Virus record (IMG/VR): IMGVR_UViG_3300047510_001118
Span: 214,127 to 278,126 of that record
DNA length: 64,000 bases
Direction: 5' to 3' (one strand)
Shown here: positions 111 through 45,289 of the stretch, in pieces
How positions within the stretch are numbered: position 1 is the first letter of the stretch
Layout of the letters: each line of letters opens with the position of its first letter
Notes under the pieces: model-generated
The model's database searches: none
What the model was told of the DNA's origin: nothing
The model's input: only the letters and a program-made list of their open reading frames with translations
Program-made: the position numbers and the translations under genes

Positions 111-305
111 ATGCGGGTGATTAAGGGGCTTGAAAGTGAAATCAAGTCGTTGAAGTTAGAATTATTAAAACTCTGTTGGTATATGAGAGGTGGTATTTCA
201 TTAGAAGAATGTTACAATCTATCATATGATGATCGAGCATTAATTGTAGACATTGTTAAAGAGAACATGGAAACTACTAAGAAATCAGGATTACCTTTCT
301 TCTAA
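111..305 (+). CDS. T4 gp51-like baseplate hub assembly / tail chaperone C-terminal module
   Basis: 64 aa with LxWYMRGGISLEE.YNLSYDDR pattern resembling gp51-like proteins; follows gp26-like ORF; no clear SD before ATG 111. Confidence 0.55.
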   Translation: MRVIKGLESEIKSLKLELLKLCWYMRGGISLEECYNLSYDDRALIVDIVKENMETTKKSGLPFF

Positions 306-312
306 CCTATAT

Positions 313-401
313 AGATGAACTACGTTCATCTGTTCTTCGCTTTCGCTCGAACTATTTCTTCTTTTCTTAACTATTGAACTATTATTAAGTGCGAAGCACT
401 T
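313..401. terminator. Hairpin cluster between convergent transcription units (terminator and/or DNA hairpins)
   Basis: AGATGAAC-tac-GTTCATCT (313-331) followed by a T/C-rich tract; GTTC...GAAC (332-352); AAGTGC-gaa-GCACTT (387-401). Confidence 0.5.
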
Positions 402-404
402 TAG

Positions 405-765
405 TATTATCCAGATTGTTCAGGTCACACTTAGCCCTAGCGGGCTAAGAAAATGAACATTATCCGAGTTGCACAATGTCACACAGCGTTATGGCATTAC
501 AGAGGCGGTCGTCCGGTACCTCGAGCCACGTCTTATCACGACGGCAGGCATATAAATGTACGCTATCACACTTATATCCGTTAGGGAATTACCCTTCATT
601 TAGCCTTTTTAAATTCTTTTCAAACAGCAAAACCAGTTGTATATAGGCATATCTGATCTTCGTCCTGTCAAGGATAGTTGCTGAGTACTCTTAACGGCAA
701 GAGAGTTTCCGTCCCTGCGACTCGTAGTCCAGGTATTAGGGCGCACGACATTGGCCTGCGCGAGC
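405..765 (-). ncRNA. Putative large structured ncRNA directly 3' of the GIY-YIG gene
   Basis: No ORF of 60 aa or more. Visibly more GC-rich than flanks. At least ten nested or serial stems (430-449, 417-422/454-459, 525-545, 550-559/568-577, 583-595, 625-630/678-683, 663-674, 688-703, 714-733, 741-745/757-761). An A.C mismatch on + (556/571) is a G.U pair on -. Confidence 0.6.
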
Positions 766-1212
766 TTATTGACCGTTTAATTTTGCCTGAGCTTGTTCTT
801 GTAGGCGTTGTCGAAGTATGTTTGAACCACCCACTCTAACGTTGATAATGCCGTTATAGTATTCGTCAGATTCTAAAACTCTGCGTTCAAACTGTTCTCT
901 TGCCTCTAAATATGACAGTTCTGCCTTGCTTTTACAGTAGTAAAGTATTTCTCTTGTGAAGTTTTCTGGACCTAATGATTGAACATCTGCGTTTAACCTA
1001 TCAGATGAGCCCCAGTATTCGCGCCAATCGCTTTCTACTGTGCTACGTCTTTTAAGTTTTTTGCCTTTGAGTGGTGGTTTAGTACGTTTGAATTGAGCTA
1101 ATTTCTTGCCTATGTACTTTTGTCCAGTTTTGAGGTTAGTAATGAGATACACAAAGCCAATATGACCTTCTGGTATTTCTTCAACTAAAGCATTTTGATA
1201 GTGCCATGACAT
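766..1212 (-). CDS. Stand-alone GIY-YIG family endonuclease
   Basis: GFVYLITNLKTGQKYIG motif, downstream LEAREQF (Glu) and YYNG (Asn); 148 aa with no obvious NUMOD/HTH DNA-binding extension. Confidence 0.85.
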   Translation of the reverse strand: MSWHYQNALVEEIPEGHIGFVYLITNLKTGQKYIGKKLAQFKRTKPPLKGKKLKRRSTVESDWREYWGSSDRLNADVQSLGPENFTREILYYCKSKAELSYLEAREQFERRVLESDEYYNGIINVRVGGSNILRQRLQEQAQAKLNGQ

Positions 1213-14050: not shown

Positions 14051-17000
14051 ATGGCATTTACTAAAGATCAAAAAGAACCAAAACTACCAATAGGTCAAGA
14101 CAGCACTCGAAGTGCTTCAGATTTTTTACCTAGATATTTTAGAACAAATACTAATCGTAAAATATTAAACGGAACACTTGATCAGTTAATATCTGTTGGT
14201 AATGTAGATAAAATTAATGCTTACATCGGTAGAAAATCTACCAAGGCGTATACGCCTACTGACAATTACTTAGAAGAAATATCTTTAGATCGTCAGTCAT
14301 ACCAACTTGAGCCTGCGATCTTAGTCAAAGACAAATTAGATAATGTAACATTTTTTAAAGATTACAACGATTATATTAATCAGTTACTATATTTTAATAC
14401 TTTTGATATTGACCACGAGCTAACTAATAGCCAAGAATTTTACAGTTGGAATCCGCACATTGATTGGGACAAATTTGTAAACTATCGTGAATATTATTGG
14501 CTACCAATGGGACCGCAGTCAATCGCAGTTAAAGGTCAGTCTAAAGACATTGTTAGCACATACTCGATTTCTTTAGTAGAAGATTCTGATAATTTTGCTT
14601 ATATTTTTACTCCTGACGGACTGACACGTAATCCTACACTAAAACTTTACAGAGGTCAAACATATAATTTTGACATTGACTGTGAAGGACAGCCTTTAAC
14701 TTTTTCTACTAATCGTTCTCAAGATATTACATTTGTCTATAAGGACGGTGTGACTAAAGATTCTGAATATGTTGAAAAAGGAACAATTACATTTAAAGTT
14801 CCTGACAATGCGCCTGATATTATCTATTATGTTAGTAAAAATAATATCAACACATCAGGATTTTTTAAAATATATGACATTGAAGAAAATACAGCCATCG
14901 ATGTTGAAAAAGAAATATTAGGTAAAAAAACTTACTTAATCGACGGAATAACTCCGCTGTCAAGTGGAATGAAAATTAATTTTATTGGTAATGTTACCCC
15001 TGAAAAATACAGTACTGGATTTTGGTATGTAGAAGGCGTGGGAAATGCTATTAGATTAGTTGATTCAGTTACTCTTGAAAATCCTGGAGGATATACATTC
15101 AGTGAAGACATTGACTTTGATAGTGAAAAATTTGATACACAAGGATTTGACAGCAACAATAACTATCCTTCTAACAAAGATTATATCACTATTAATAGAT
15201 CAAGCCGAGATAGAAACCCGTGGTCAAGATATAATAGATGGTTCCACAAATCTGTTATCGAAACATCGGCAGCATATAATAATCAACCTATAGATCTTGA
15301 CCAAGAAGCAAGGGCTAAAAGACCTATTGTTGAATTTGATAGAGATATCCAACTTTGGAATTTTGGAGTAGAAGCAAAAAATTCAATAGACTTAATTGAT
15401 TTATATACTAAAGATGTTTTTAGCACGGTAGAAGGATCATTTGGATTTAAAGTTGATGGTGTTTCGTTAGTCGAAGGCATGCGTGTATTGTTTGCCGCAG
15501 ACACTGATAAAACAGTCAATGGTAGAATTTTTAAAGTAACATTTGTTACGCACCTAGGACAAAAAAGAATTTCTCTAATTGATGTTGATGATACAAATCC
15601 TATCGAAGGAGAAAGTGTATTAGTACTACAGGGAGATTTTTTAAAAGGAAAAACATTCCATTATTCGTCTGGTGTATGGAATTTAAGTCAAGAAAAGACT
15701 GGTCTTAATCAGCCACCGTTATTTGATACTGTTGATGTATCTGGAAATAGTTTTGGAGATCGATCTGTTTATATCGGTTCTACTTTCCAAGGAACTAAAA
15801 TTTTTAGTTATGCTGTAGGAGACGTACTAGATCCAGTGTTAGGCTTTAACATTGATTATCGCAATATTGGCAACATCGGAGATATTGTTTTTGATTTTAA
15901 TTTACAAAAAGATCAGTTTACCTATCAAGGTGAAGTTGAATTAATTACAAAAAAATTAGATAGAGGTTATCTAAAGAAAAATATTTCTATTTCAACTTTT
16001 AATTTAATAAACGGTTGGGTTAAGGCAGAATTTAATTCTAAGCAACCAGTTATTCGTCAATACGACACAACAACTCAAAACAATTTATTTGAAATTGATG
16101 TTTATAAAAATAGTGCCACACTAGACGATCTTGAAGTGTCAGTGTTTGTTGATGATATCAAACAGCCTTCTACTTCCTATGAAGTATATAGACAAAATAG
16201 CATAGCCTACATTCAATTTAACAGCGACTTAGACACGAACAGATCTGTAGTATTAGAAACACGGTCAGCGGCAAAGAAATTAAAAGATGTTGGTTATTAT
16301 AAGTTTCCAAGCAATCTTGAAAGTAATCCTCAAAATTTAAGTCTTGACGATTTAACACTGGGAGAAATCACAAATCATTTAAAAACTATTGTTGATAATT
16401 CTCCAAGTTTTTCAGGACAAATGCCAGGAATTAGTAATCTACGAGATATCGGAGATCAAACTGGATACGGTAGTCAAATAATTCAACACTCTGCTCCGTT
16501 GGCACCAATTATCTATTCTTTTACTAACAAAAATGTTAATATAATTAAGTCTCTAAGATATGCCAATGATGAATACTCAAAGTTTAAAAGAAACTTTATT
16601 AGAACTGCTACAACATTAGGATATGATGGGGAAACTCGAGATCATGTTGATTTAATTTTTAAAGAATTAAGAAAAAATTCTACTACATCATCACCATTCT
16701 ATCTCAGCGACATGGTACCGTTTGGTGTAAACTTTATCTACGAACAAGAAATCATCGACGATAGTTTTACTGATTATCCGTTGACATTTGATTTTAATTT
16801 AGAAACATTAAGTCGTAAATCAGTTTTAGTTTACTTAAACGACACATTATTATTATATGGTAGAGATTACATCTTTACAAATGACAGTTTTGTTAGATTG
16901 TTAGCCCCAATCACTACAGGTGACAATTTAAAGGTAGCACAATATGAAAACAGCCTTGGCTGCTGTGTTCCACCGACGCCTACTAAGTTAGGATTATATC

Positions 17001-20000
17001 CAAAATTTGAACCTAAAATTTTTATTGATAACACATATCAAACACCAACGTTGGTAATTCAAGGGCACGATGGCAGTATCACAGTAGCCTTTAATGATTA
17101 TAGAGATAATCTAATATTAGAATTAGAATATAGAATTTATAATAATATTAAGAAAGAATATGATCCTTCATTGTTTGACATTAATAATTTCATTGAAGGC
17201 CACCATAGAAAAACTAACCTTTCAACTAATGAATTAAATCTTGCTTTAAGACAAGAATTTTTAACTTGGTTAGGTTTAACTAATAAAGATTATACAAAGC
17301 ACGATTTCTTTGATAGAAATAATCCTTATACATTTAATTACAAGTCTTATTCAAGCTCTGACGGAACGCCATTAATTGGATTCTGGAGAGGAATATACAA
17401 ATATTTCTATGACACTGACAGACCGCACACACACCCATGGGAGATGTTAGGTTTTTCAAATAAGCCAACTTGGTGGGACAGTGTATATGGAATTGCGCCT
17501 TATACTAAAGATAATTTAATTTTATGGAATGATCTAAGAGATGGAATAATTAGAGAGCCTGGCATACTACCAAAACAAAATAAAAAATACGTTAGGGAAG
17601 ATTTATTAACTTATATTCCTGTTGATGCTGAAGGCAATCTTTTAAATCCTTTAGAAATTGGATTAGTAAGAAATTATGTAGCAACGTCTGCTGAAAAAGA
17701 ATTTACGTTCGGCGACTGGGCGCCTGTTGAAACTGCTTGGAGACGCGGCAGTCAATATCCGTTTGCTTTAATTACAGCCTTAACACTGTTAAGACCTGCT
17801 CAAATGTTTGCTGTTTGCTTTGATAGAGAGCGTCAATATAGAGACGGAACAGGGCAAATTGTATATAAAATGCCAGCAGGAAATCTAAGATTTAATACAA
17901 CTAATTTAGTCTTTCCTAATACAGTAAAAGAATCTGAAAATAGATTTACCAGTGGACTAATCAACTATATGTGCGATTATGCTATAAGTAAATCTTTTGG
18001 ATTTTTAGAAGAGTTTAAAACTGAGTTATCAAGTTTACAAATAAAAATTTCTAGCAAGTTGGCAGGATTTACTAGCAAAGAAAAATTTAAACTTATTCTC
18101 GACAGCCGTAGTCCTTTAAATCAAGGAAATGTTTTTATACCGCAAGAGAATTATAATATAATTCTTAATACTAGCAGTCCTATTTTATCAATATCTTATA
18201 GTGGTGTAATTATTGAAAAAACATCTAGCGGTTTTGTAATCAATGGATATAATAAATCAAATCCTGACTTTAGATATTTTAAACCATTAGATACAGTTTC
18301 AGACCCAACAGTTAATGTGGGCGGTATTTCAGAAACATATCTCGAGTGGACTTCGGGTAAAACATACACTAAAGGCCAAGTTGTAAGAGTTGATCAAAAC
18401 TTTTATAGAGTAACGGCTTCTCATGATGGCGGCCCTTCTTTTGAATTAAAATATTTTGCTAAACTACCAGCACTACCAATCGTGGGCGGCAGAGAAGTTA
18501 TTATTAGAAGAAACTTTACCACAGAAGTTTCAACAATACACTACGGGGCCGAATTAAAAACAACACAAGAAGTGGTTGATTTTGTATTAGGTTACGGTAA
18601 ATGGTTAGAAAGCCAAGGATTTATTTTTGACAGTTTTAATCCTGTAATTAAAACAGTTACAGACTGGCAAACTAGTGCCAAAGAGTTTGCCTTCTGGACA
18701 ACTCAAAATTGGAGTACTGGATCTGTAATTACCCTAAGCCCAGCAGCCGAAGAAGTAACATTTGGAAAATTATATGCGGTTGCTGACAGCATCTACGATC
18801 CGTTCTATGAATATACAGTGTTCAAACAAGACGGTCAAACATTAGATCCAAATTTTACAAATACTGTAAGAGAGAATAATTCTTTTAGTATCCGTCCTAA
18901 AGATACTGGAGATGGTGTTTATCACATTACATTAAATTTAATTCAAAAAGAACATGTGCTAATATTAGATGATGTTACGGTGTTTAATGATGTAATATAC
19001 GATCAAACACAGGGATATAGACAGGATAGGATTAAAGTTGTAGGCTATAAAATATCAGACTGGAACGGCGATTTTGTTATTCCTGGATTTGTGTATGACA
19101 GAGCAGTATTAACTGAATGGAAACCTTGGAGAGATTATGCTCTAGGAGAAACTGTAAAATACAAAGAATTTTATTACAGTGCTAGAAAAAATATTCCAGG
19201 AACTGAGCTATTCAACGACGACGAGTGGTACAGATTAAACGGTAAACCAGAAAGTAAATTAATTCCTAACTGGGACTATCGTGCTACACAGTTTGAAGAT
19301 TTTTATGATCTAGATACAGATAGTTTCGATGTTGATCAACAAAAGTTTGCTCAACATTTAATTGGTTATCAAAAGAGACAATATCTTGAAAACATTATCA
19401 ATGATGATGTAAGCCAGTATAAGTTTTATCAGGGCATGATTCAAGAAAAAGGAACAAAGAATAGCCTTTCAAAATTATTTGACGTATTAAGTTCTACAGA
19501 TGCCGACAGCCTTGAATTTTATGAAGAGTGGGCAATTAGATTAGGTCAGTACGGAGCCAGCGAAGGATTTGAAGAAGTTGAGTATCTATTAGACGAGTCT
19601 CAATTTTTAATAAATCCACAGCCTATTGAATTAGTTGATTCAGTACCTCCGGGCGTGAATGATTTTGTCTACAGAATTACTAGAGATAAAGTTTATCTAA
19701 AACCAGACACATACGATCACAAACCTATTCCTACAGTTAGGTCTAAGAAAGAATATATTCCTACTGCTGGCTATGTACATTTAGAAGATATAAAATATAT
19801 TATAACTTCTAAAGATCAAATTGGTGACTATAATATCAATGATCTAAAAGAGGGCGATTATTTTTGGTTAGGATTTGATAAAACATCTTGGAATGTTTAC
19901 AGATTTACTCTAGTTGTTTCTTCAGTAAGATCCTTCCAAGAATTATCTAATCTAAGAATTAATTTTAATTCAGCAAGTAGTTTATTTTCTGTAAATGATT

Positions 20001-23000
20001 TTATCGGAATTAACAATACAAATTCATCTGTTGAAGGAATAAAACAAGTTTTAGCAGTCGGCCCAGGATATATTGAAATTGAACTTCCTCAAGATCTTGA
20101 TACTGAAGCCATTGCGGCACTTAATAACAATCTACAAGTAAACTTATTTGCTTTTACGTCGCAGAGATTAGCAACTACAAGTTCTAAAATTTCAACAATA
20201 GACGACTTAAATGATTTACCTGTTCCTAGAAAAAAGAACGGAGAACTTGTTTGGATTGACGGTGCTAATAATGACTGGAGTGTGTGGAAGTTTGACAAGT
20301 CATATTCTCGATCAGTGATATCTAACACTGCTGATTATTTTGGTAGAACATTAGCAGTAAGCGAAGACGATTCTATTTTTGCTGTTAGCAGTCTAACAAC
20401 TCTAGTTGATAGCAATGGGGATCCTAGAGTAGACGATAACGGAGATATATTAAAGTCTGATGTCTTATCTTTTTATACAAGATCTACTGAAAAGTTTTCA
20501 TGGCTCCTAAAGGGAGAAATATCAAAATTAACAACAATTATTCAGAACGAAAGTTTTCAAAATACAAACTATAGTTTTGGAGAATCGTTAGCCCTTAGCG
20601 CCGCCGGCGACTATCTATTAGTTGGAGCACCAGCATACGGAATAGTTGAGATTCCTCAACCACCGTTGCCACCGATTGAAATAGTTAAAAATTGGGGTTA
20701 TGTTGCCAAGTATAATAAAAACAGATTTAATAATTTTGAATTTGACAGAGTTATTTTAAGTCCAGTACAAACAGATAATGAGTTCTTTGGTCATAAGATA
20801 GCAATATCTGGTAACGTTGCGTTTATTGCCGGTAAAGGCAGTGACACGGCGCCTGCGTCTTTGACAGCATACAATCTAGCATCTAATACAACGACCGTAA
20901 GAATTACTTTCTCTAATGTAGAAATTATTGATTTAACAACAGGTTCTGATAATACTGTGGTAATTTCTAAATCAGACTCAACTGTAGCAGTATACAAACT
21001 AGTAGGAAATTCTTTAACATTAATACAAAATATATCATCAAGTGTTGTTCCAGGTACGCTAATTGACGACAAGTTTGGCCAATCTGTATCAATTTCTAAA
21101 GATAATTCTATGATTGCTGTGGGAATTCCATACTACAGTGAAGTGAATTCTAATCAGGGCACAGTGGCAATTTTAATTAAATCTGGTTCAACTTATCAGT
21201 ACAGTTATCGTGTCAACAGCCCATTAAAACAAGAATCGGAAAGATTTGGTTACAGAGTTAGATTTAATCCTACTGGAAATAGATTGGTAGTTTACAGTTA
21301 CGGTGGCGACCAAACCATTGACACAACGATTGATCAAGGTACAACTACGTTTGACCTAGACGCAATGAAATTTGTAGAGCGCAGTGAAAATGTTGGAAGT
21401 GTGCGTGTCTATGAAAAATACGGAAACAAGTTTATATTCGATGACGAACTTGAGCCTCAAGAAGTCATAGGAATTAATTACGGCGACAATTTAGTAGTGG
21501 GTAGAAACAACATATATGTCAATGACTACACAGCCGTAGAAGGACGTTTCTATGAATTTGTAGGACGATCAACTTCGTGGACAAAATATAGAAGTCCAGA
21601 TCCTATTGTTGACCTAACAAAGATAAAATCTATCTTCTTATACGATACTGTTAAAAATAATATTATTCAAAATTTAGATTTCATCGATCCAATCAACGGA
21701 AAAGTTTTAGGTGTTGCTGAACAAGAACTAAGTTTTAAAACTTATTACGATCCGGCTGTATATTCAACAGGTACTGATGCTGTAGTTGTCGATAGTTTAA
21801 TGCCATGGAAACAACAGCAAGTTGGAAAGTTATGGTGGGATTTAAGTACAATTAAATTTGTTAATCCTAATCAAGGTAGTGTTGTCTATAAAGCAAATAC
21901 ATGGAATAATGTATTTGCTGAAGCAGAGGTTGATATCTACGAATGGGTTGAGTCAGAATATTCACCAGAAGAGTGGGATAGTCTAGCAGACACTGAAGCC
22001 GGCCTTACACTAGGAATCAGCGGAGTATCAAAATATGGTGCTCAGGTATACAGCGTTAGTCAAACTTATGACAACGTAAGCAAAACATTTAAAAACATTT
22101 ATTATTTCTGGGTTAAAAATAAATCAATAGTTCCTGATGTAACCTTCCGTAAAGTTTCAGCCAGAGAAGTCTCAGAATTAATTTCTAATCCTAAATCTAA
22201 AGGCATTAGATATGTTACTTTATTAGGAAATAATCAATTAGCGTTAGTTAACTGTAAAGAATTAATCACTGACAAAGATGTTGCTTTAAATATTCGCTAT
22301 TGGATTATTGACAAAACAGATCAAAATATACACAGTCATTATCAATTATTAGCCGAAGGCAACGTTGACAAAAAACTTAACAAGTATGTTGAACAAAAAT
22401 GGTTTGATAGTTTAATTGGATATGATAACCAGGGTAGAGAAATTCCTGATCCAAGTTTGCCACCGAAGTTAAAATATGGTATTTTAAGCAAACCTAGACA
22501 GTCAATGTTTGTTAATAGATTAGAGGCATTAAAACAGGTTATCGAAAGAGTTAATTCTGTATTAGTAAACAATTTATTAATTGATGATTTTGATTTTGAT
22601 ATTTTAAATTCTAAAGAAGAACCTCCGTCAGAATTTTCAAGAGAATATGACATAGCAATTGACACTCAAAGTCAAATTAGATTTGTTGGATCTACCGGCT
22701 TTGACCAAGCCACTGCTAGTTTAGTAATCAAAGAAGGCAAAATTGAACGAGTAATAGTAACTAGTGCGGGTAGAGGATACAAGATTCCTCCTTCTGTAAA
22801 AGTTATTTCTAATACCGGCTCAGGAGCAAGATTATCAACAGTTATCAACTCTTCAGGAGAGGTTACTGCTATTAATATTGACAATGCTGGTAGAAATTAT
22901 CAAACATCGACCTTTGTAGAAATTAGACCGTTTACTGTATTAGTTACTACTGACGAAACTGCGGCTAGTAAGTGGTCACTGTACACCTGGAACTCAGCAA

Positions 23001-26000
23001 TCGCTAACTGGACCAGAAGTCGTACACAAATTTATGATGTAACAAAACATTGGAACTATATTGACTGGTATGCCACCGGATTCTCATCTTATACTAAAAT
23101 AAATCATCAAATCGATTTAGCATACGAAATGAGCTTTATTGATATTGCCATTGGCGATATAGTTAAGATTAACAATGAAAAAACAGGTGGCTGGATATTA
23201 TTACAAAAAATTAATAATCTTGATACCGATAACGTATCCTTAAATTATAAAACAGTAGGCCGTCAAAACGGAACTATACAATTTAACTCAAATCTTTATA
23301 AGTTTAAGAACAGTAACATAGGTTACGATAGTACAAGTTATGACAGAGATGTCTATGACGACGAGCCTAAAGAAGAATTAAGATTTATTTTAAGTTGTAT
23401 AAAAAATAATTTACTAATTGATAATTTAGAAATTGAATATAACAAATTATTCTTTTCAAGTTTGAGATACGTGTTTACTGAACAAGGTTTTGTTGATTGG
23501 GCATTTAAGACTAGTTTTATCAAAGCCAAACATAATTTGGGAGAGCTTAAACAGAAGGTTACTTTTAAGAGCGACAATCTAGAAAGTTATGAAGATTATA
23601 TTAATGAAGTTAAACCATACAGAACTAAGATTAGAGAATTTATCAGTAATTATACAGCCTATGATCAAACTAATTCTGCTGTAACTGATTTTGATTTACC
23701 TCCAAGGTATGTAACAGCCGAAGGTCAAATTTTACCTTTTACTGTTAAAGTTAAAAATTCTCAGATTGAATATATAGAATCAGACATTCTAAAAGAGCCG
23801 TATCAAGATTGGTTGTCTTCTGTTGGTTACCAAGTAGTTGAGATTAGAGTAATTGACGGCGGCACAGGATATCAAGGGCCTCCTCAAGTAGAAATAGTCG
23901 GTGACGCCGAAACAACAGCAACAGCAAAAGCCTATGTTTCTCAGGGAGCAGTTTCTAAAGTAATAGTTGAAACGCCAGGTCAAGGATATGTAACTATCCC
24001 AACAATACGTTTTAATGGATCAGTTGGTGCTACAGGTAGACCTGCTAAGGCCATTGTAGTATTAGGAAACTCTTTAGTAAGAACAAATAATCTTGGAATT
24101 AAATTTGATAGAATTTCACCTGAGTTTACAGTATCGTCTATTACAGTAACGCAGGCATTTGACGGTACAGGATCAAGAACTAGATTTGAATTACGCTGGC
24201 CAGTTGATTTATCTGTTGAAAAAACCACAGTGTTCATAGATACTGAAGAACTACTATCTAATGACTTTGAAGTTTCAAACGAACTAGATACTACCTCAAA
24301 GTATACTAGATATAAAGGAATTTTAACCTTAACCAAAGCCGCGCCTATAACAACTACAGTTACTATCAATTATGCCAAAGACATAAGATTATTAGACGCC
24401 GCTGATAGAATTCAATATTATTATGAACCTGGAATTGGCCAATTAGGAAAAGATCTTGGTCAATTAATGGAAGGTGTTGATTATGGCGGTGTTGAAGTTA
24501 CCGGGTTAGACTTTGACCTTGGTGCTGGCTGGGATGGCTTGCCTTGGTTTACATCTGGATGGGACGACTTTGATGTAAACTATACTGATCATTTAGTGGT
24601 AACTGACGGTGTACAAAGAACATTCGAATTACCATACACACCCGCAGACGGTGAAGCACTTAACATTTATCTAAACAGTGTTAGAATCGACGATCCAAAT
24701 TACGATGTATATACTCTAGCAGAAGACAATTACAATAGTTTAGTTGCTGAACTTGTGATACTTCAACAAGAAGAAGAAGTATTACAGCAGGCATATGACC
24801 AAGCAGTAATTGATTATGATAATATTATAGCCGAACAAGTTGCTCGTCAGGAACAGTATGATAACCTTACAGCAGATTATGCTCCTGATTCAGGTGCTGA
24901 ACCCGATCCCGATCGTCCTTGGGCAGTGCCTGGCGGTACAGATCCAATTAATATACCGCTTGAAAATCTATTAACAGAGATTCTCGCAGACATTGCGGAT
25001 CTACAGGCCCAGGCAATCGCTGCAGCAACTGTTAGAAATAATGCTCTAGATGATTTAACTGACAAACAACAAGAAGTAGCAGATAAAGAAGATGAAGTAA
25101 GCGATGCTCTTGACACACTTAATGCCGCTCCGGAAATTACAAATCCAACAGCGTCAATGAATACATTCTACGGTGACGGCATAACCAATGAAGTGGTTAT
25201 TCCAAATAATGTTGTTATCGCTGATAAAGATCAGTTTATCTTCCGTAAGATTACCAGTGACGGTAGTTTTAAACCAAACGAAAAGTTTTACGATTCTGAA
25301 ATTATTGGCGGACTTCCAAATTCAACAACAGGCGGCATGAGTTACGAAACTGCCAAAGGAATCCTAGCAGAAGAAATTATTATCGATGGCGATAATTTTG
25401 TAACTACGACATCAAGTCATGCTCCAGAAGAAGTAGTTACTGGGCAGGTGCTAGATTCTGTTTCAATAACAGTCTATGACACAGTTAGCGACGGTTCTCC
25501 GGTGATTTTAAATAGACATTATATTGCCGATGGTGTTCAAACTGAATTTGCTATTGGACAAAAACCAAATACGACTCAAGCCGCATTGGTTAAAATAAAT
25601 GGTTTTGTTAAAAAACAAGATGTTGATTATACTTTTGATTATATAAATCAAAAAATTATTTTTGATACAGCGCCTCAAAAACTTGATGAAGTTGTTATTA
25701 CATCAATGAGTAGAAACGGTCTAAATGTATTAGATGCTGATTCTTTTGTTGGCGACGGTATTACTAAAGAATTTATTACAGTTGCTCGTTGGGAGGAAGA
25801 CAAGTATTCTGTATTAGTGACAATTAACGGCGAAGCAGAAACAGTAACAACATTTATTACAGATTCGTCTTACAGTGAAGTTGGTAATATAGGAATTATT
25901 TTTGATACAGCACCAGTAGCCGGAGCAATCATTGATTACACTGTATTAAGTTCAACAGTTAATACTATCAGTTATATGAAAACTGAAACAGTAATACATG

Positions 26001-27997
26001 ACGGAACGGCTGATTCTTATGTATTAACTCAAATACCTTCTAACTTGAAACCTTTTGAGAATAATGTAATAGTTGAAGTTGCCGGCGAAGTTCTTCGTCC
26101 ATCAGACGCAGTGTACTTTGACGTTCAGGGAACTAATAGAACCTACATAGTTGATGTAGGAGATTATGCTTTAAATTCTATCGATACTTCACAAGTTGAA
26201 GTTTATAGAAATGGAGTAAAACTTTCAGTGTCAATTCAGTATACGTGGACTTCAACTAAAAATGAATTAAAGATTAAACGTGGTATTGCTAATCCGGGTG
26301 ATAAGATTGTATTAGTAATAGTTGATCAAGGTCAATACTATATCGAACCCGACGGCACCGATTTAAAACTAAGACTAGTTGGCACTTATACAGCAGGTGA
26401 TAAAATTTCTGTAACAACTTTTTCAAATCATGATATTCTTGAAATTGAAAGAAATAATACTTACATTAGATCTGCCTCAGAACTAATAAGAGGAACACCA
26501 GAATATTACACAATTAACGAGGTTATCAATGGAAGATTTAAATTAAGATATCCTATTAGTTCTGCTTCTTATGTGTGGGTAACATTTAATGGTAAGTTAT
26601 TAACATCTGAATTAGATTATATTCTTGAAGATAATAACGAATACATCCAAATAGATAAAAATCGAAACCTATTAGAAACTGATTTAGTTGAAATTATCGT
26701 ATTCAATGATGAGTATACTAAACGTCCTTTTGGTTACAGAATTTTTAAAGATATGCTTAACAGAACATTCTATAAGAGAATTGACGATACTATATCTACA
26801 AAATTAGCAACACCTTTAAATTATTTTGATACAGAAATAGAAGTAGAAGATGCCAGCGGACTCTTAGAACCAAATAGAGATCAAAACGAAGCAGGCATCA
26901 TTTATATTAATGCGGAACGTATTGAGTATCTTGAAAAAGATGGCAACACTTTAAGATATCTTCGTAGAGGTACATTAGGTACAGGAACTCCAGCAAGTCA
27001 TCCAATAGGATCATTTGTAAGAGACCAAGGTAAAAATCAAACTATTCCTTACAAAGACGAAACTGAAACTGTGGTATTAGTAGCCGATGGTTACCTAAGT
27101 GCGCTAACTGATTTTGAAAATTCTTCAACAGTAACAGTTACTGATATTAGATACGCAAGCCCAGTAAACAATAATACTGCGTTTCCGTTAGGCGGACAAA
27201 CTGTTACAGTTAAAGGTACAGGATTTAAATCTAACGTTAAGGCCTATGTTGGTAATACCGAATGTCCTACAACTTATATTAGTCCAACAGAATTAACATT
27301 CGTAAACCCACAAAAAACAGTTGGAGCATATGATCTTGTTATTACAAATCCTTCAATAATCATTGACGGCAATCTAATTCCTTCTACAAGCAGAGTAGTG
27401 CCTGGCGCAATTAAGTATCTACAGATACTTCTACCTTTTAGTCCTGCGCCAAACCCAAGTACGGAAACAGGATGGTATAAGAATACTGAAATATTAAATG
27501 TCTCAAAAATACAGATTGGTCGATATTACACTATTTCAGAATCTGGAACAACAGACTTTATTGCGATGGGTGCTGGCTCTAATAATCCGGGACATAGTTT
27601 CTTGGCTACTGCTACTGGTACAGGAACTGGAACAGTAATTAATTATTCTAGTATTCCGTATGAGTATTGGGAAGGACAAGACATTGAAATGTTCATTGGC
27701 GGTAAGAGATTACGTAAGAGTCCGTTGAGCATTTGGGACGAATCGTTAGGCCCAGACAGTCCTAGCGGTGACAAAACATTAGAAGCAGAGTTTGCAGTAA
27801 ACAAAAACATAGGACCCTATGTAAGGTTAACTACACCTCCTCCTAAAGGATCTAAGATTATAGTACAGAAGAAACTTGGACAAATGTGGACAGCACCGGG
27901 AGTACAATTATCAGATAGTCAAACCGATCAGGCTAAGTTTATTAGGGCCGGTGTTGTCTATCTACCAGGAAAAACCCAAATAAATAATGGGAATTAA
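14051..27997 (+). CDS. Giant multidomain baseplate wedge / structural protein (gp7-position), 4648 aa
   Basis: Uninterrupted ORF after gp6; N-terminal LPRYFRT.TN.K.L..TLDQL; CBM-like W-x4-Y repeats, FG-GAP-like propeller, KPYRTKIREF, repeated beta modules, IPT/TIG-like domain near C-terminus. Confidence 0.75.
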   Translation: MAFTKDQKEPKLPIGQDSTRSASDFLPRYFRTNTNRKILNGTLDQLISVGNVDKINAYIGRKSTKAYTPTDNYLEEISLDRQSYQLEPAILVKDKLDNVTFFKDYNDYINQLLYFNTFDIDHELTNSQEFYSWNPHIDWDKFVNYREYYWLPMGPQSIAVKGQSKDIVSTYSISLVEDSDNFAYIFTPDGLTRNPTLKLYRGQTYNFDIDCEGQPLTFSTNRSQDITFVYKDGVTKDSEYVEKGTITFKVPDNAPDIIYYVSKNNINTSGFFKIYDIEENTAIDVEKEILGKKTYLIDGITPLSSGMKINFIGNVTPEKYSTGFWYVEGVGNAIRLVDSVTLENPGGYTFSEDIDFDSEKFDTQGFDSNNNYPSNKDYITINRSSRDRNPWSRYNRWFHKSVIETSAAYNNQPIDLDQEARAKRPIVEFDRDIQLWNFGVEAKNSIDLIDLYTKDVFSTVEGSFGFKVDGVSLVEGMRVLFAADTDKTVNGRIFKVTFVTHLGQKRISLIDVDDTNPIEGESVLVLQGDFLKGKTFHYSSGVWNLSQEKTGLNQPPLFDTVDVSGNSFGDRSVYIGSTFQGTKIFSYAVGDVLDPVLGFNIDYRNIGNIGDIVFDFNLQKDQFTYQGEVELITKKLDRGYLKKNISISTFNLINGWVKAEFNSKQPVIRQYDTTTQNNLFEIDVYKNSATLDDLEVSVFVDDIKQPSTSYEVYRQNSIAYIQFNSDLDTNRSVVLETRSAAKKLKDVGYYKFPSNLESNPQNLSLDDLTLGEITNHLKTIVDNSPSFSGQMPGISNLRDIGDQTGYGSQIIQHSAPLAPIIYSFTNKNVNIIKSLRYANDEYSKFKRNFIRTATTLGYDGETRDHVDLIFKELRKNSTTSSPFYLSDMVPFGVNFIYEQEIIDDSFTDYPLTFDFNLETLSRKSVLVYLNDTLLLYGRDYIFTNDSFVRLLAPITTGDNLKVAQYENSLGCCVPPTPTKLGLYPKFEPKIFIDNTYQTPTLVIQGHDGSITVAFNDYRDNLILELEYRIYNNIKKEYDPSLFDINNFIEGHHRKTNLSTNELNLALRQEFLTWLGLTNKDYTKHDFFDRNNPYTFNYKSYSSSDGTPLIGFWRGIYKYFYDTDRPHTHPWEMLGFSNKPTWWDSVYGIAPYTKDNLILWNDLRDGIIREPGILPKQNKKYVREDLLTYIPVDAEGNLLNPLEIGLVRNYVATSAEKEFTFGDWAPVETAWRRGSQYPFALITALTLLRPAQMFAVCFDRERQYRDGTGQIVYKMPAGNLRFNTTNLVFPNTVKESENRFTSGLINYMCDYAISKSFGFLEEFKTELSSLQIKISSKLAGFTSKEKFKLILDSRSPLNQGNVFIPQENYNIILNTSSPILSISYSGVIIEKTSSGFVINGYNKSNPDFRYFKPLDTVSDPTVNVGGISETYLEWTSGKTYTKGQVVRVDQNFYRVTASHDGGPSFELKYFAKLPALPIVGGREVIIRRNFTTEVSTIHYGAELKTTQEVVDFVLGYGKWLESQGFIFDSFNPVIKTVTDWQTSAKEFAFWTTQNWSTGSVITLSPAAEEVTFGKLYAVADSIYDPFYEYTVFKQDGQTLDPNFTNTVRENNSFSIRPKDTGDGVYHITLNLIQKEHVLILDDVTVFNDVIYDQTQGYRQDRIKVVGYKISDWNGDFVIPGFVYDRAVLTEWKPWRDYALGETVKYKEFYYSARKNIPGTELFNDDEWYRLNGKPESKLIPNWDYRATQFEDFYDLDTDSFDVDQQKFAQHLIGYQKRQYLENIINDDVSQYKFYQGMIQEKGTKNSLSKLFDVLSSTDADSLEFYEEWAIRLGQYGASEGFEEVEYLLDESQFLINPQPIELVDSVPPGVNDFVYRITRDKVYLKPDTYDHKPIPTVRSKKEYIPTAGYVHLEDIKYIITSKDQIGDYNINDLKEGDYFWLGFDKTSWNVYRFTLVVSSVRSFQELSNLRINFNSASSLFSVNDFIGINNTNSSVEGIKQVLAVGPGYIEIELPQDLDTEAIAALNNNLQVNLFAFTSQRLATTSSKISTIDDLNDLPVPRKKNGELVWIDGANNDWSVWKFDKSYSRSVISNTADYFGRTLAVSEDDSIFAVSSLTTLVDSNGDPRVDDNGDILKSDVLSFYTRSTEKFSWLLKGEISKLTTIIQNESFQNTNYSFGESLALSAAGDYLLVGAPAYGIVEIPQPPLPPIEIVKNWGYVAKYNKNRFNNFEFDRVILSPVQTDNEFFGHKIAISGNVAFIAGKGSDTAPASLTAYNLASNTTTVRITFSNVEIIDLTTGSDNTVVISKSDSTVAVYKLVGNSLTLIQNISSSVVPGTLIDDKFGQSVSISKDNSMIAVGIPYYSEVNSNQGTVAILIKSGSTYQYSYRVNSPLKQESERFGYRVRFNPTGNRLVVYSYGGDQTIDTTIDQGTTTFDLDAMKFVERSENVGSVRVYEKYGNKFIFDDELEPQEVIGINYGDNLVVGRNNIYVNDYTAVEGRFYEFVGRSTSWTKYRSPDPIVDLTKIKSIFLYDTVKNNIIQNLDFIDPINGKVLGVAEQELSFKTYYDPAVYSTGTDAVVVDSLMPWKQQQVGKLWWDLSTIKFVNPNQGSVVYKANTWNNVFAEAEVDIYEWVESEYSPEEWDSLADTEAGLTLGISGVSKYGAQVYSVSQTYDNVSKTFKNIYYFWVKNKSIVPDVTFRKVSAREVSELISNPKSKGIRYVTLLGNNQLALVNCKELITDKDVALNIRYWIIDKTDQNIHSHYQLLAEGNVDKKLNKYVEQKWFDSLIGYDNQGREIPDPSLPPKLKYGILSKPRQSMFVNRLEALKQVIERVNSVLVNNLLIDDFDFDILNSKEEPPSEFSREYDIAIDTQSQIRFVGSTGFDQATASLVIKEGKIERVIVTSAGRGYKIPPSVKVISNTGSGARLSTVINSSGEVTAINIDNAGRNYQTSTFVEIRPFTVLVTTDETAASKWSLYTWNSAIANWTRSRTQIYDVTKHWNYIDWYATGFSSYTKINHQIDLAYEMSFIDIAIGDIVKINNEKTGGWILLQKINNLDTDNVSLNYKTVGRQNGTIQFNSNLYKFKNSNIGYDSTSYDRDVYDDEPKEELRFILSCIKNNLLIDNLEIEYNKLFFSSLRYVFTEQGFVDWAFKTSFIKAKHNLGELKQKVTFKSDNLESYEDYINEVKPYRTKIREFISNYTAYDQTNSAVTDFDLPPRYVTAEGQILPFTVKVKNSQIEYIESDILKEPYQDWLSSVGYQVVEIRVIDGGTGYQGPPQVEIVGDAETTATAKAYVSQGAVSKVIVETPGQGYVTIPTIRFNGSVGATGRPAKAIVVLGNSLVRTNNLGIKFDRISPEFTVSSITVTQAFDGTGSRTRFELRWPVDLSVEKTTVFIDTEELLSNDFEVSNELDTTSKYTRYKGILTLTKAAPITTTVTINYAKDIRLLDAADRIQYYYEPGIGQLGKDLGQLMEGVDYGGVEVTGLDFDLGAGWDGLPWFTSGWDDFDVNYTDHLVVTDGVQRTFELPYTPADGEALNIYLNSVRIDDPNYDVYTLAEDNYNSLVAELVILQQEEEVLQQAYDQAVIDYDNIIAEQVARQEQYDNLTADYAPDSGAEPDPDRPWAVPGGTDPINIPLENLLTEILADIADLQAQAIAAATVRNNALDDLTDKQQEVADKEDEVSDALDTLNAAPEITNPTASMNTFYGDGITNEVVIPNNVVIADKDQFIFRKITSDGSFKPNEKFYDSEIIGGLPNSTTGGMSYETAKGILAEEIIIDGDNFVTTTSSHAPEEVVTGQVLDSVSITVYDTVSDGSPVILNRHYIADGVQTEFAIGQKPNTTQAALVKINGFVKKQDVDYTFDYINQKIIFDTAPQKLDEVVITSMSRNGLNVLDADSFVGDGITKEFITVARWEEDKYSVLVTINGEAETVTTFITDSSYSEVGNIGIIFDTAPVAGAIIDYTVLSSTVNTISYMKTETVIHDGTADSYVLTQIPSNLKPFENNVIVEVAGEVLRPSDAVYFDVQGTNRTYIVDVGDYALNSIDTSQVEVYRNGVKLSVSIQYTWTSTKNELKIKRGIANPGDKIVLVIVDQGQYYIEPDGTDLKLRLVGTYTAGDKISVTTFSNHDILEIERNNTYIRSASELIRGTPEYYTINEVINGRFKLRYPISSASYVWVTFNGKLLTSELDYILEDNNEYIQIDKNRNLLETDLVEIIVFNDEYTKRPFGYRIFKDMLNRTFYKRIDDTISTKLATPLNYFDTEIEVEDASGLLEPNRDQNEAGIIYINAERIEYLEKDGNTLRYLRRGTLGTGTPASHPIGSFVRDQGKNQTIPYKDETETVVLVADGYLSALTDFENSSTVTVTDIRYASPVNNNTAFPLGGQTVTVKGTGFKSNVKAYVGNTECPTTYISPTELTFVNPQKTVGAYDLVITNPSIIIDGNLIPSTSRVVPGAIKYLQILLPFSPAPNPSTETGWYKNTEILNVSKIQIGRYYTISESGTTDFIAMGAGSNNPGHSFLATATGTGTGTVINYSSIPYEYWEGQDIEMFIGGKRLRKSPLSIWDESLGPDSPSGDKTLEAEFAVNKNIGPYVRLTTPPPKGSKIIVQKKLGQMWTAPGVQLSDSQTDQAKFIRAGVVYLPGKTQINNGN

Positions 27998-37285: not shown

Positions 37286-37286
37286 T

Positions 37287-37511
37287 TTATTTTTGTCCTT
37301 TGTTGACGCTCTCTAAGAATGTATTCAACTTATTATAAGTTGCGCCCACAGCAGTCATTTCAGCCGGTTTAAATGCGCCTCTCTGTGCGGCAATATCAAT
37401 AATGCTACGAAGCATATTGAGGTCTTGTACAGTTAGATCAGCACTTGGCTGTTGTTGCTCCGGTGTTTCCGGATTAGCAATTACTTCTTTAGTTTCGGTG
37501 TTTTCAGTCAT
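37287..37511 (-). CDS. Hypothetical protein (start refined to MTENTE)
   Basis: SD AAAGGAG before ATG 37511. Confidence 0.7.
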   Translation of the reverse strand: MTENTETKEVIANPETPEQQQPSADLTVQDLNMLRSIIDIAAQRGAFKPAEMTAVGATYNKLNTFLESVNKGQK

Positions 37512-37543
37512 AGTTATACTCCTTTGTGCTATTATATATGCTG

Positions 37544-37822
37544 TTAATGATTTGTGTACTTTAAATGTGAGCAAGCCAGTAAAAAGAAACTAAGCTCTTT
37601 TGGCTCTTCAAAACCAATTTTAGTTTTAATTTGAAATTGGTTATTCTCTAATGTTAGCGTTTCTCCAATATAAAATCTATACCGAAGATTTTCGTAAACC
37701 CATTCTCTAATTGCTTCAGTTAAATTGTACTTAACATCCAAATAATGATAATGAAAATAGGGAGGCGGATCTGGCACCTCCCTACAATCCAAAACATTTA
37801 GCGGATTAATCTTACGATTCAA
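37544..37822 (-). CDS. Hypothetical phage protein
   Basis: 92-aa ORF overlapping the VWA gene stop. Confidence 0.65.
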   Translation of the reverse strand: MNRKINPLNVLDCREVPDPPPYFHYHYLDVKYNLTEAIREWVYENLRYRFYIGETLTLENNQFQIKTKIGFEEPKELSFFLLACSHLKYTNH

Positions 37823-40668: not shown

Positions 40669-40952
40669 TACTTAATTTCTTCACCTGTGGTCAATTTATA
40701 AACGGAAAAGTTTTTGGTATTGAACATTGTGTTTAATTTTTTAGCCAAATTGTGTGCGTGTCCGGGATTAGAGAAAGATACCTTTTTATATTTGCTACCA
40801 GAGTATCCACCAAGACTATTTTGGCTTTTTAAATTAAAAGGTTTCCCATCATAAAAGACTGCCCAAATGGCTTCTGCTTCTAATATTTGATCGCTCTTAA
40901 AATTTTTCTTATTAATGTTTTCTAGTACTACAGTTGGCTTAGGTCGACTCAT
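40668..40952 (-). CDS. Hypothetical basic phage protein
   Basis: 94-aa ORF with SD GAGG and upstream ATAAATA. Confidence 0.7.
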   Translation of the reverse strand: MSRPKPTVVLENINKKNFKSDQILEAEAIWAVFYDGKPFNLKSQNSLGGYSGSKYKKVSFSNPGHAHNLAKKLNTMFNTKNFSVYKLTTGEEIK

Positions 40953-40985
40953 ACGTATTCCTCAATTATATACGTATATATTTAT
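40951..40985 (-). promoter_or_regulatory. Late promoter ATAAATA with two ATACGTAT palindromes
   Basis: ATAAATA at 40985-40979; TATATACGTATATA 40967-80; ATACGTAT 40951-58. Confidence 0.55.
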
Positions 40986-40991
40986 CCGAAT

Positions 40992-41243
40992 TTATTCGGA
41001 TTTATTCCAACTGCCTCCGTCCATTTCTACTTTAACTACAGTGTCTTTTTCTTCTTTTTGTATATTTAAAATAAGGTTTTCGTAATTACCGGCTAATCTA
41101 GTCATAACTAGTCCTAGTGTATAAGATAAATTTTTAGCCGTAGTAATATCCAATCTTACTTCTCGTTGGTTACTCATATCTGCGGCTTTAATCGCAGATA
41201 TCACCTGCTGTAAAACTGCGGTATTGATATTATTTTGAGACAT
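40992..41243 (-). CDS. Hypothetical protein
   Basis: 83-aa ORF in operon. Confidence 0.65.
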   Translation of the reverse strand: MSQNNINTAVLQQVISAIKAADMSNQREVRLDITTAKNLSYTLGLVMTRLAGNYENLILNIQKEEKDTVVKVEMDGGSWNKSE

Positions 41244-45273: not shown

Positions 45274-45289
45274 TGTAATTCTCCGAGTT

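What the first reader, a model, noticed from the sequence alone, without database searches (positions are those of the whole stretch)
405..1212. Minimal GIY-YIG nuclease followed immediately by a ~360-nt densely structured RNA: candidate nuclease-RNA system
Seen: the 148-aa GIY-YIG ORF has only the catalytic domain and a short basic tail, with none of the NUMOD, Zn-finger or HTH modules that give homing GIY-YIGs such as I-TevI specificity. Its stop codon abuts a GC-elevated non-coding stretch with at least ten nested stems, including multi-way junctions (CAGCAA/TTGCTG enclosing TCCT/AGGA; TGTTCA/TGAACA enclosing an 8-bp stem; a 10-bp stem with a G.U pair only on the - strand). No separate promoter lies between them, so the RNA is probably co-transcribed. 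I could not match it to group I/II intron, RNase P, tmRNA or known ribozyme cores. Inference: the layout resembles nuclease-plus-RNA loci such as IscB/HEARO or TnpB/omegaRNA, so the RNA may scaffold, guide or regulate the nuclease.
Basis: partly seen in the sequence, partly recalled or inferred. Interest (0 to 1): 0.85.

Follow-up and report, generated by a model that had tools for sequence, protein, structure and literature searches.

The report
Phage nuclease gene beside large RNA
A freshwater T4-like phage carries a conserved, pseudoknotted RNA of about 455 bases, whose first third is the orphan Rfam motif Polynucleobacter-1, almost always next to a tiny nuclease gene, but the evidence points to two linked neighbours rather than an RNA-guided nuclease.

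Summary
Window 766..1212 (-) encodes a 148-aa catalytic-domain-only GIY-YIG protein, and a structured non-coding RNA starts at its stop codon.

The RNA is longer than reported, about 455 nt (766 to about 310, - strand). Its first 145 nt are Rfam RF01718, Polynucleobacter-1 (105 bits). That orphan motif was already noted in 2010 to lie downstream of one gene family. The 3' two-thirds are not in Rfam. They have strong covariation, three pseudoknot pairings, a UUCG hairpin, a GNRA module and a terminator hairpin.

More than 200 uncultured phage contigs carry the RNA. In an RNA-first sample of 98 loci:
- 88 have a GIY-YIG gene upstream.
- 4 have an unrelated PD-(D/E)XK nuclease gene upstream.
- 2 have a GIY-YIG gene downstream.
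- 4 have no nuclease; three of these have tRNA genes nearby and two also a tmRNA.

Homologous GIY-YIG genes occur without the RNA in cultured phages. No guide-like variable end exists.

One feature is unexplained: two 13-nt direct repeats whose heptamers change in concert across lineages.

Best reading (about 0.45): an autonomous stable phage RNA gene with homing-endonuclease-like nuclease genes beside it, as segB sits in the T4 tRNA cluster. An RNA-dependent nuclease is not excluded (about 0.2).

The parts
766..1212 (-). Gene for a 148-aa GIY-YIG nuclease: catalytic domain plus a C-terminal helix, with no DNA-binding module
   Evidence: ORF. Pfam PF19835 at 2e-35. phrog_447 at 5e-39. Invariant Y22, Y33-G35, R87, E103 and N120 in alignment A2. 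AlphaFold pLDDT 86.8, with I-TevI catalytic domain as best PDB fold.
622..766 (-). 5' domain of the RNA, the Rfam RF01718 Polynucleobacter-1 motif. It starts at the last base of the stop codon.
   Evidence: cmscan gave 105.2 bits against a gathering score of 37, E 1e-21, over model positions 1-141.
583..595 (-). Small hairpin, the first helix of the 3' domain
   Evidence: Covarying pairs 595/582, 593/583 and 592/585. The covariation is visible in alignment A1.
547..579 (-). Long hairpin of about 10 bp plus GG/CC. Its loop, AUAGCGU (566..560), forms a pseudoknot with 489..483.
   Evidence: RNAalifold pairs with 7-31 double changes each. MI pairs 577/550 to 568/559. Loop pairs 561/488 (GC:52, AU:26), 560/489 (UA:57, GC:19) and 566/483.
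483..542 (-). Pseudoknotted, nearly invariant core. Helix 542..539 pairs with 511..508, which lies in the loop of helix 522..519/505..502. Helix 529..525 pairs with 495..491. Strand 489..483 pairs with the loop of the long hairpin.
   Evidence: MI pairs 540/510 (UA:47, CG:32), 539/511 (GC:50, AU:23), 528/492 (GC:39, CG:18, UA:12) and 526/494. Invariant columns listed. RNAalifold helix.
459..471 (-). Twin element copy 1: CAA-CUC-GGAUAAU
   Evidence: The heptamer is identical to copy 2 in 85 of 88 loci. There are 16 versus 15 state changes on a tree built without these columns. Normalised MI is 1.0 for 465/412, 464/411 and 461/408.
430..449 (-). 8-bp hairpin between the twin elements, followed by the conserved GUGUGAC
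   Evidence: Helix 1: 8 of 8 pairs have compensatory changes and 96% of cells are paired.
406..418 (-). Twin element copy 2: CAA-UCU-GGAUAAU
   Evidence: Exact coordinates were checked.
389..399 (-). Hairpin with a C(UUCG)G tetraloop, which indicates that the - strand is the RNA strand
   Evidence: Covarying stem in helix 2 and MI pairs 400/388, 399/389 and 398/390. GCUUCGC is conserved in most of the 56 copies.
332..352 (-). Helix enclosing GAGCG-GNRA-GCGAA: a GNRA-capped two-pair stem flanked by G/A residues. It is shared by all clades of the RNA.
   Evidence: Helices 3 and 4. Present in clade C.
310..331 (-). Terminal 7-bp hairpin. In many relatives a U-run follows it, making it an intrinsic terminator and the 3' end of the RNA. 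In the window it also serves the convergent + strand gene.
   Evidence: Helix 5: 7 of 7 pairs compensatory and 99% of cells paired. U-runs are seen.

Best explanation
Window 766 to about 310 (- strand) encodes one RNA of about 455 nt. It is a pseudoknotted, strongly conserved phage non-coding RNA whose 5' third is the orphan Rfam motif Polynucleobacter-1.

It is probably made by read-through from the small GIY-YIG gene just upstream and ends at its own terminator hairpin. This step is inferred from two facts: no promoter was found, and the terminator is conserved.

The most likely relation between the two parts is linkage, not guidance. On this reading the RNA is an autonomous, trans-acting stable RNA gene of T4-like freshwater phages. 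In some other phages it lies near tRNA genes, in two of them also near a tmRNA. Its two identical 13-nt elements would address a common partner that is still unknown.

The small nuclease genes beside it have no DNA-binding domain. Most are GIY-YIG and one lineage has PD-(D/E)XK. I read them as homing-endonuclease-like genes that sit at this very conserved RNA gene and promote inheritance of the locus, as SegB does for the T4 tRNA cluster.

Shown: the RNA, its structure, its conservation, the linkage statistics, the nuclease replacement and the exceptions. Inferred: transcription, trans action and homing.
For: The RNA:
- RF01718 at 105 bits.
- The whole element of about 455 nt is colinear in 116 of 122 loci.
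- The RNA keeps 65% identity where four-fold degenerate sites of the adjacent gene are saturated at 32-35%.
- Covariation and pseudoknots.

Linkage:
- 42 of 42 loci.
- 88 GIY-YIG upstream, 4 PD-(D/E)XK upstream and 2 GIY-YIG downstream among 98 loci.

Signs of independence:
- Melnitz GIY-YIG is 67% identical, sits after nrdB and has no RNA.
- PD-(D/E)XK replaces GIY-YIG upstream of the same RNA.
- Unrelated ORFs are inserted between the gene and the RNA in 5 loci.
- Four loci have no nuclease. Three of them have tRNA genes nearby. Two of those (L375, L327) also have a permuted tmRNA, and L375 has about 18-20 tRNA genes.

Homing-like behaviour:
- GIY-YIG lineages are shuffled relative to the backbone. 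The rank correlation of GIY-YIG with gp46 identity is 0.18, and 36 pairs have gp46 above 80% but GIY-YIG below 65%.

Precedent:
- T4 SegB is a GIY-YIG enzyme in the tRNA gene cluster (PMC2330249, PMC13096335).
Against: - A selfish homing gene should be sporadic. Here a nuclease gene is present and intact in about 96% of RNA loci and is under purifying selection. No degraded copies were seen.
- Both nucleases lack any recognisable DNA-binding domain, so it is unclear how they would find a specific site.
- No allele that has the RNA but lacks a nuclease was found in the gp46 context.
- No transcript data exist, so co-transcription and stability of the RNA are unproven.
- The function of the RNA itself remains unknown.
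Confidence: 0.45

Rival explanations
1. Functional ribonucleoprotein. The RNA binds the small nuclease, which has no DNA-binding domain, and supplies specificity or scaffolding. The twin 13-mers would pair with a DNA or RNA target, giving an RNA-dependent nuclease analogous in logic to group II intron RNPs or OMEGA systems.
For: - Very tight adjacency across three GIY-YIG clades down to 43-55% protein identity.
- The nucleases have a catalytic domain only.
- The twin elements behave like specificity determinants: 17 variants, always matched within a locus, with about 15 concerted changes.
- Both pyrimidine triplets could pair with the same purine triplet.
Against: - The same GIY-YIG family works elsewhere without this RNA.
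- It is hard to see two unrelated small folds, GIY-YIG and PD-(D/E)XK, both binding the same RNA.
- The RNA occurs without a neighbouring nuclease.
- Genes can separate the two parts.
- Neither RNA end is variable.
- No complementary target was found in cis or enriched in 0.9 Mb of phage flanks.
Confidence: 0.2
2. Cis-acting or antitoxin-like control. The RNA is a long 3' UTR that stabilises, silences or neutralises a potentially toxic nuclease. It could act by protecting the mRNA 3' end or by acting as an RNA inhibitor, as in type III toxin-antitoxin logic.
For: - The RNA abuts the stop codon and no promoter lies between.
- Any small nuclease type is tolerated upstream, as expected if the RNA handles 'a nuclease' generically.
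- The RNA contains two repeat units.
Against: - About 455 nt of pseudoknotted, nearly invariant core is far more than a stabiliser needs.
- The RNA occurs without a nuclease and near tRNA genes.
- In 2 loci the GIY-YIG gene lies downstream.
- In 5 loci another gene intervenes.
- Type III toxins are RNases and their RNAs lie upstream.
Confidence: 0.15
3. Mainly a DNA-level element. The conserved region would be a replication or recombination initiation site next to gp46/gp47, and the twin repeats would be nuclease cut or binding sites. The nuclease would make breaks there that seed recombination-dependent replication.
For: - The position is directly downstream of the Mre11/Rad50-like gp47-gp46 pair in most loci.
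- Direct repeats kept identical could reflect DNA-level homogenisation.
Against: - Compensatory base-pair changes, G-U pairs, UUCG and GNRA loops and pseudoknots show selection on a folded single strand of defined polarity.
- The element also occurs away from gp46, near tRNA genes.
Confidence: 0.08

Closest known systems
Polynucleobacter-1 RNA motif (Rfam RF01718; Weinberg et al. 2010, PMC2864571)
   Same: Window 622..766 (-) matches the full model at 105 bits. The freshwater origin is the same, and so is the position downstream of one gene family. The 2010 supplement says 'downstream of GOS11034 genes, possible homology to PSSM2_218 of cyanophage P-SSM2'.
   Different: - The family describes only 141 nt. 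Here it is the 5' third of an RNA of about 455 nt.
- The upstream gene is now identified as a GIY-YIG nuclease.
- A sister clade keeps the 3' half but has a 5' domain the model does not recognise.
- The function is still unknown.
T4 segB: free-standing GIY-YIG homing endonuclease gene inside the tRNA gene cluster (PMC2330249; PMC13096335)
   Same: A GIY-YIG gene of a T4-like phage lies next to stable RNA genes. The nuclease and the flanking RNA genes are inherited together. In some phages this RNA lies near tRNA genes, in two of them with a tmRNA.
   Different: - Seg proteins carry a C-terminal DNA-binding region, from my own knowledge. This protein is the catalytic domain only.
- segB is sporadic among T-even phages. 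This gene is nearly always present.
- Cleavage activity was not tested here.
OMEGA systems (IscB with HEARO/omega RNA, TnpB with omega RNA)
   Same: A nuclease gene is directly followed by a large structured RNA on the same strand.
   Different: - The nuclease fold differs: GIY-YIG rather than RuvC/HNH, and no RNA-binding domains.
- There is no transposon end.
- There is no variable guide at an RNA end.
- Co-occurrence is not obligatory.
Large ornate phage-associated RNAs of unknown function (GOLLD, ROOL)
   Same: These are large, highly structured, conserved RNAs of phages or prophages, often near tRNA genes (my own knowledge). Their biochemical role is unknown.
   Different: No sequence or structure match was found; Rfam holds these families and reported no hit. 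This RNA is smaller and linked to nuclease genes.

Membership tests
Rfam RF01718 Polynucleobacter-1 RNA | Covariance-model score at or above the curated gathering score (37 bits) over the full model | tested here: met
   105.2 bits, E 1e-21, model positions 1-141 of 141, window 622..766 (-).
Rfam RF01718 Polynucleobacter-1 RNA | Location downstream of the GOS11034 / PSSM2_218-like gene family (Weinberg 2010 supplement) | tested here: inconclusive
   The RNA lies downstream of a GIY-YIG gene whose relatives are found in 22 Prochlorococcus and 339 Synechococcus phage records. Identity of that family with GOS11034 / PSSM2_218 was not checked directly.
GIY-YIG nuclease superfamily (Pfam PF19835 SegE_GIY-YIG) | Profile match above the curated cut-off | tested here: met
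   122 bits against a cut-off of 25, E 2e-35, residues 3-123.
GIY-YIG nuclease superfamily (Pfam PF19835 SegE_GIY-YIG) | Conserved catalytic motif residues (GIY, YIG, Arg, Glu, Asn) and the GIY-YIG fold | tested here: met
   F20-V21-Y22, Y33-I34-G35, R87, E103 and N120 are invariant in 19 sequences down to 56% identity. The best PDB fold is the I-TevI catalytic domain with target-normalised TM 0.64-0.66, though the Foldseek E-value is weak at about 0.5.
Free-standing homing endonuclease (Seg-like) | A DNA-binding module that gives site specificity | tested here: not met
   No domain beyond the catalytic one was found by Pfam or PHROGs. The model shows only one extra helix.
Free-standing homing endonuclease (Seg-like) | Sporadic presence or absence among close relatives | tested here: not met
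   Of 80 loci chosen by gp46, every locus with enough downstream DNA had GIY-YIG, except one lineage with PD-(D/E)XK. However, lineages are shuffled against the backbone and the nuclease family is replaceable.
Free-standing homing endonuclease (Seg-like) | Cleaves the cognate locus of genomes lacking it and is copied in by repair | not testable with these tools
   This needs enzyme assays and mixed infections.
RNA-guided nuclease systems (OMEGA / CRISPR-like) | A variable guide segment in the RNA that matches targets | tested here: not met
   Both RNA ends are conserved. The only lineage-variable single-stranded elements are the twin 7-13-mers, and no complementary target was found.
RNA-guided nuclease systems (OMEGA / CRISPR-like) | Obligatory co-occurrence of the nuclease family and its RNA | tested here: not met
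   Nuclease without RNA. RNA without nuclease. Replacement of the nuclease family.
Group I intron with embedded or adjacent endonuclease gene | A group I catalytic core and flanking exons of an interrupted gene | tested here: not met
   No Rfam intron hit at E up to 1. No gene is interrupted: stop codons occur in all frames and the downstream gene is convergent.

The most novel reading that the evidence does not exclude
The RNA is the specificity or scaffold subunit of a new kind of ribonucleoprotein. In it, interchangeable mini-nucleases (GIY-YIG or PD-(D/E)XK) are aimed by two identical, lineage-programmable 13-nt elements at a nucleic-acid target.
Probability: 0.13. Interest if true: 0.92.

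Novelty: new variant of a known kind. Interest (0 to 1): 0.62.

Why it matters
Polynucleobacter-1 has been an orphan Rfam motif since 2010. This analysis adds the following:
- The motif is only the 5' third of a much larger pseudoknotted phage RNA.
- Its partner gene family is a minimal GIY-YIG nuclease.
- A sister clade has a different 5' domain.
- In one lineage an unrelated nuclease takes the partner's place.
- Some copies lie near tRNA genes, two of them also near a tmRNA.

It also uncovers two internal 13-nt elements that change in concert about 15 times. That is the signature of a shared base-pairing partner or another identity constraint, and it gives a concrete handle for experiments.

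If the RNA works with the nuclease, this would be a new class of RNA-dependent nuclease. If not, it is still a widespread, highly constrained phage RNA of unknown function. It also shows homing-type nuclease genes gathering around a conserved RNA gene.

Tried and rejected
- blastn of the locus and of the clade-C RNA against 50,697 phage records found no match, so no cultured phage carries the RNA.
- The PDB sequence search with the protein found nothing.
- T4 endonuclease II was considered because the Melnitz homologue sits after nrdB. It appeared in neither the sequence search nor the fold search.
- Coding potential of the RNA region is rejected: stops occur in all frames and indels are not in threes.
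- The UGUUCA/UGAACA stem is not conserved.
- Pairing of the twin heptamers with the CUAUCC of the 5' domain shows no covariation.
- A cis complement of the heptamers was not found: no consistent site within 3 kb either side and no third covarying column.
- A trans complement in flanking phage DNA is not enriched over controls, and none is shared in the tRNA/tmRNA-rich loci. A third copy at window 10745 is a chance match inside a gene.
- Genes inserted between or after the parts are heterogeneous, have no Pfam match and are absent from the window.
- The genome-contig scan hit only metagenome-assembled-genome (MAG) contigs that look like mis-binned phage. The isolate Polynucleobacter copy reported in 2010 was not recovered with my 3'-domain pattern.
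- Stop-codon recoding of the window phage is not indicated: 89% coding with the standard code.
- PA5oct has the closest cultured gp46 at 50% identity but has no such cassette.

Full report
**What is at the coordinates.** The - strand ORF 766..1212 encodes 148 aa. It matches Pfam PF19835 (SegE_GIY-YIG) over residues 3-123 at E 2e-35. It also matches PHROG 447, whose label 'NAD synthetase' is a misnomer carried over from GenBank. Nineteen relatives down to 56% identity keep the GIY, YIG, Arg, Glu and Asn positions. An AlphaFold model (pLDDT 86.8) shows the nuclease fold plus one C-terminal helix. Its best PDB matches are the I-TevI catalytic domain, with target-normalised TM 0.64-0.66 and a weak E-value. 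No DNA-binding module was found. The window is part of a T4-like myovirus. It holds gp47/gp46 directly upstream, baseplate genes and a gp43-type polymerase. No cultured phage is close; the best gp46 match is 50% identical.

**The RNA, 5' third.** Rfam reports one hit in the 64-kb window: RF01718 Polynucleobacter-1 at 622..766 (-). It scores 105 bits against a gathering score of 37, covers the full model and begins at the last base of the stop codon. The 2010 description calls it a freshwater motif of unknown function with 16 representatives. It places the motif 'mostly downstream of genes of family GOS11034, possibly homologous to PSSM2_218 of cyanophage P-SSM2' and reports it absent from purified phages.

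**The RNA, 3' two-thirds.**
- Region 621..about 310 has no Rfam match, but it is at least as conserved as the 5' third.
- The whole element of about 455 nt is colinear behind the gene in 116 of 122 loci. The other six are cut contigs.
- It has stops in all frames.
- It keeps 65% nucleotide identity where four-fold degenerate sites of the neighbouring gene are saturated at 32-35%.
- In 56 copies less than 90% identical to one another (alignment A1), RNAalifold and a mutual-information scan support several helices: a small hairpin (595..583), a long hairpin (579..547), an 8-bp hairpin (449..430), a C(UUCG)G hairpin (399..389), a helix enclosing GAGCG-GNRA-GCGAA (352..332) and a terminal hairpin (331..313).
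- Three crossing pairings are also supported by Watson-Crick-only covariation. Loop 566..560 pairs with 489..483. Strand 542..539 pairs with 511..508, inside the loop of helix 522..519/505..502. Helix 529..525 pairs with 495..491.
- A covariance model of the 3' half was aligned to 51 hits. It gives 95.1% paired cells against 65.9% in shuffles (0 of 500 reach it). Compensatory changes occur in 24 of 25 pairs, and the covariation score is 0.69 against at most 0.125 when partners are slid.
- UUCG and GNRA loops, G-U pairs and U-runs after the last hairpin in many relatives fix the - strand as the RNA strand. They also mark an intrinsic terminator.
- No sigma-70-type promoter lies between gp46 and the RNA on that strand. 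Transcription from upstream is therefore the simplest reading, but this is inferred.

**How tight the linkage is.**
- A scan of viral contigs with a pattern from the RNA alone returned 42 true copies and 75 chance matches. All 42 have a GIY-YIG gene upstream on the same strand, with proteins only 43-80% identical to the window's.
- Synteny is gp47, gp46, small variable ORFs, GIY-YIG, RNA, 0-1.5 kb of variable genes, then a convergent 64-aa gene.
- Eighty loci were chosen through gp46. Of these, 45 have the known pair and 22 are cut too short to tell. Twelve have a third GIY-YIG clade (69-75% identical) with no RF01718 hit.
- Those twelve have their own conserved ORF-free stretch of about 480 nt. 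The 3'-half model detects it at E 1e-11 to 1e-20. The same model finds nothing in Melnitz, S-SRM01, phiN3, PA5oct or chance loci. The RNA family therefore has a conserved 3' half and at least two kinds of 5' domain.

**Evidence against an obligatory nuclease-RNA machine.**
1. The closest cultured homologue, in Methylophilales phage Melnitz (67% identity), lies after nrdB. It is followed by an unstructured 148-nt spacer with no RNA hit. S-SRM01 and phiN3 homologues also lack the RNA.
2. In the one gp46-selected locus without GIY-YIG (L253), the gene upstream of the RNA is a 171-aa PD-(D/E)XK endonuclease (PF24608, E 1.6e-27). All 8 related loci with downstream DNA carry the RNA.
3. Five loci have unrelated 257-324-aa ORFs between the gene and the RNA.
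4. A second RNA-first scan used a 3'-half pattern and returned 112 loci, 98 of them with enough upstream DNA.
   - 88 have GIY-YIG upstream.
   - 4 have PD-(D/E)XK upstream.
   - 2 have GIY-YIG immediately downstream, with Cys-rich ORFs upstream.
   - 4 have no nuclease and no remnant of one.
5. Three of those four have tRNA genes nearby.
   - L375 has about 18-20 tRNA genes, a permuted tmRNA and a tRNA with anticodon CUA.
   - L327 has two tRNA genes, a permuted tmRNA and a tRNA with anticodon CUA.
   - In L375 and L327 the RNA has an RF01718 domain at 83 and 64 bits and is followed by a T7 gp0.7-like kinase gene.
6. GIY-YIG lineages are shuffled relative to the backbone. The rank correlation with gp46 identity is 0.18. 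Thirty-six pairs have gp46 above 80% but GIY-YIG below 65%.

**The twin elements (new and unexplained).**
- The 3' half holds two direct repeats 53 nt apart: 471..459 (CAA-CUC-GGAUAAU) and 418..406 (CAA-UCU-GGAUAAU).
- Seventeen heptamer variants exist across loci, following the rule R-S-A-U-R-A-N. Within a locus the two copies are identical in 85 of 88 cases and 98 of 112. Most of the exceptions are mis-registered pattern matches.
- On a tree built without these columns the state changes 16 and 15 times. Position 1 flips eight times in both copies, and 6 of 6 independent supported contrasts go the same way.
- The triplet before the pyrimidine triplet also changes in concert. Clade C follows the same rule with ACAUGAA, or ACGUGAA in both copies of one locus.
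- No third column covaries with them and no cis complement exists. No complement is enriched in 0.9 Mb of flanking DNA.
- Both pyrimidine triplets could pair with one purine triplet, so both copies could bind one and the same 13-nt partner. Positions 4-6 are always UAA or UGA. I could not assign a meaning.

**Interpretation.**
- The best-supported reading (about 0.45) is that the RNA is an autonomous stable phage RNA gene. The small nuclease genes would be homing-endonuclease-like neighbours of a very conserved target. The precedent is T4 SegB, a GIY-YIG enzyme in the tRNA cluster, which promotes inheritance and even amplification of that RNA gene region (PMC2330249, PMC13096335).
- Replacement by another nuclease family, occurrence on either side, and lineages that do not track the backbone all fit this reading.
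- Three things do not fit: the near-universal presence and purifying selection of the nuclease, the absence of any DNA-binding domain, and the lack of nuclease-free alleles in the gp46 context.
- Those points keep a ribonucleoprotein reading alive (about 0.2). A cis-regulatory or antitoxin-like reading (about 0.15) and a DNA-level reading (about 0.08) are weaker.

**Novelty and score.**
- The 5' third and its gene linkage are known.
- New here are the full extent and pseudoknotted architecture, the nuclease identity, the second 5'-domain clade, the PD-(D/E)XK replacement, the tRNA context (with a tmRNA in two loci) and the concerted twin elements.
- Full-text searches found no paper describing any of this or a natural RNA-dependent GIY-YIG enzyme.
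- I rate the finding a new variant of a known kind, with interest 0.62.

Noticed in passing
window 14051..27997 (+): A single 4648-aa ORF lies in the structural module, between a baseplate-wedge-like gene and tail-fibre-like genes.
   Followed up: no
window 37819..38991 (-): A 390-aa ORF matches phrog_1314 'HNH endonuclease' at E 2e-113. This may be a second nuclease-type gene in the window.
   Followed up: no
window 45274..46195, 56499..57233, 40669..41229, 37286..37818: Stretches of 530-920 nt have no ORF of 120 aa or more. Rfam at gathering threshold found nothing there. They were not examined for small genes or new RNAs.
   Followed up: no
L375 (whole locus, - strand); L327: Other phages carry the same RNA among tRNA genes (about 18-20 in L375, two in L327) with a two-piece (permuted) tmRNA and a tRNA with anticodon CUA. 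A T7 gp0.7-like protein kinase gene lies directly after the RNA.
   Followed up: partly
L304:3382-3822 (-) and L344:4509-5003 (+): Homologous Cys-rich ORFs of 146 and 164 aa (34% identical, no Pfam or PHROG match) sit upstream of the RNA in the two loci where GIY-YIG lies downstream.
   Followed up: partly
window 311..333: The terminal hairpin of the RNA is followed by a T-run on the + strand. It probably also terminates the convergent 64-aa gene (111..305), making it a bidirectional terminator.
   Followed up: partly
alignment A2, columns 49-54: GIY-YIG clade B carries a six-residue insertion in a very basic loop (KLKNGxKKKKK) that clade A, including the window, lacks. Clade A instead has a longer C-terminal helix.
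   Followed up: no
L002, L087, L140, L159, L101 (alignment A1 columns 160-217): Some copies of the RNA have a 20-60-nt insertion rich in UAUAG repeats after the pseudoknotted core. It marks a tolerated expansion site.
   Followed up: no
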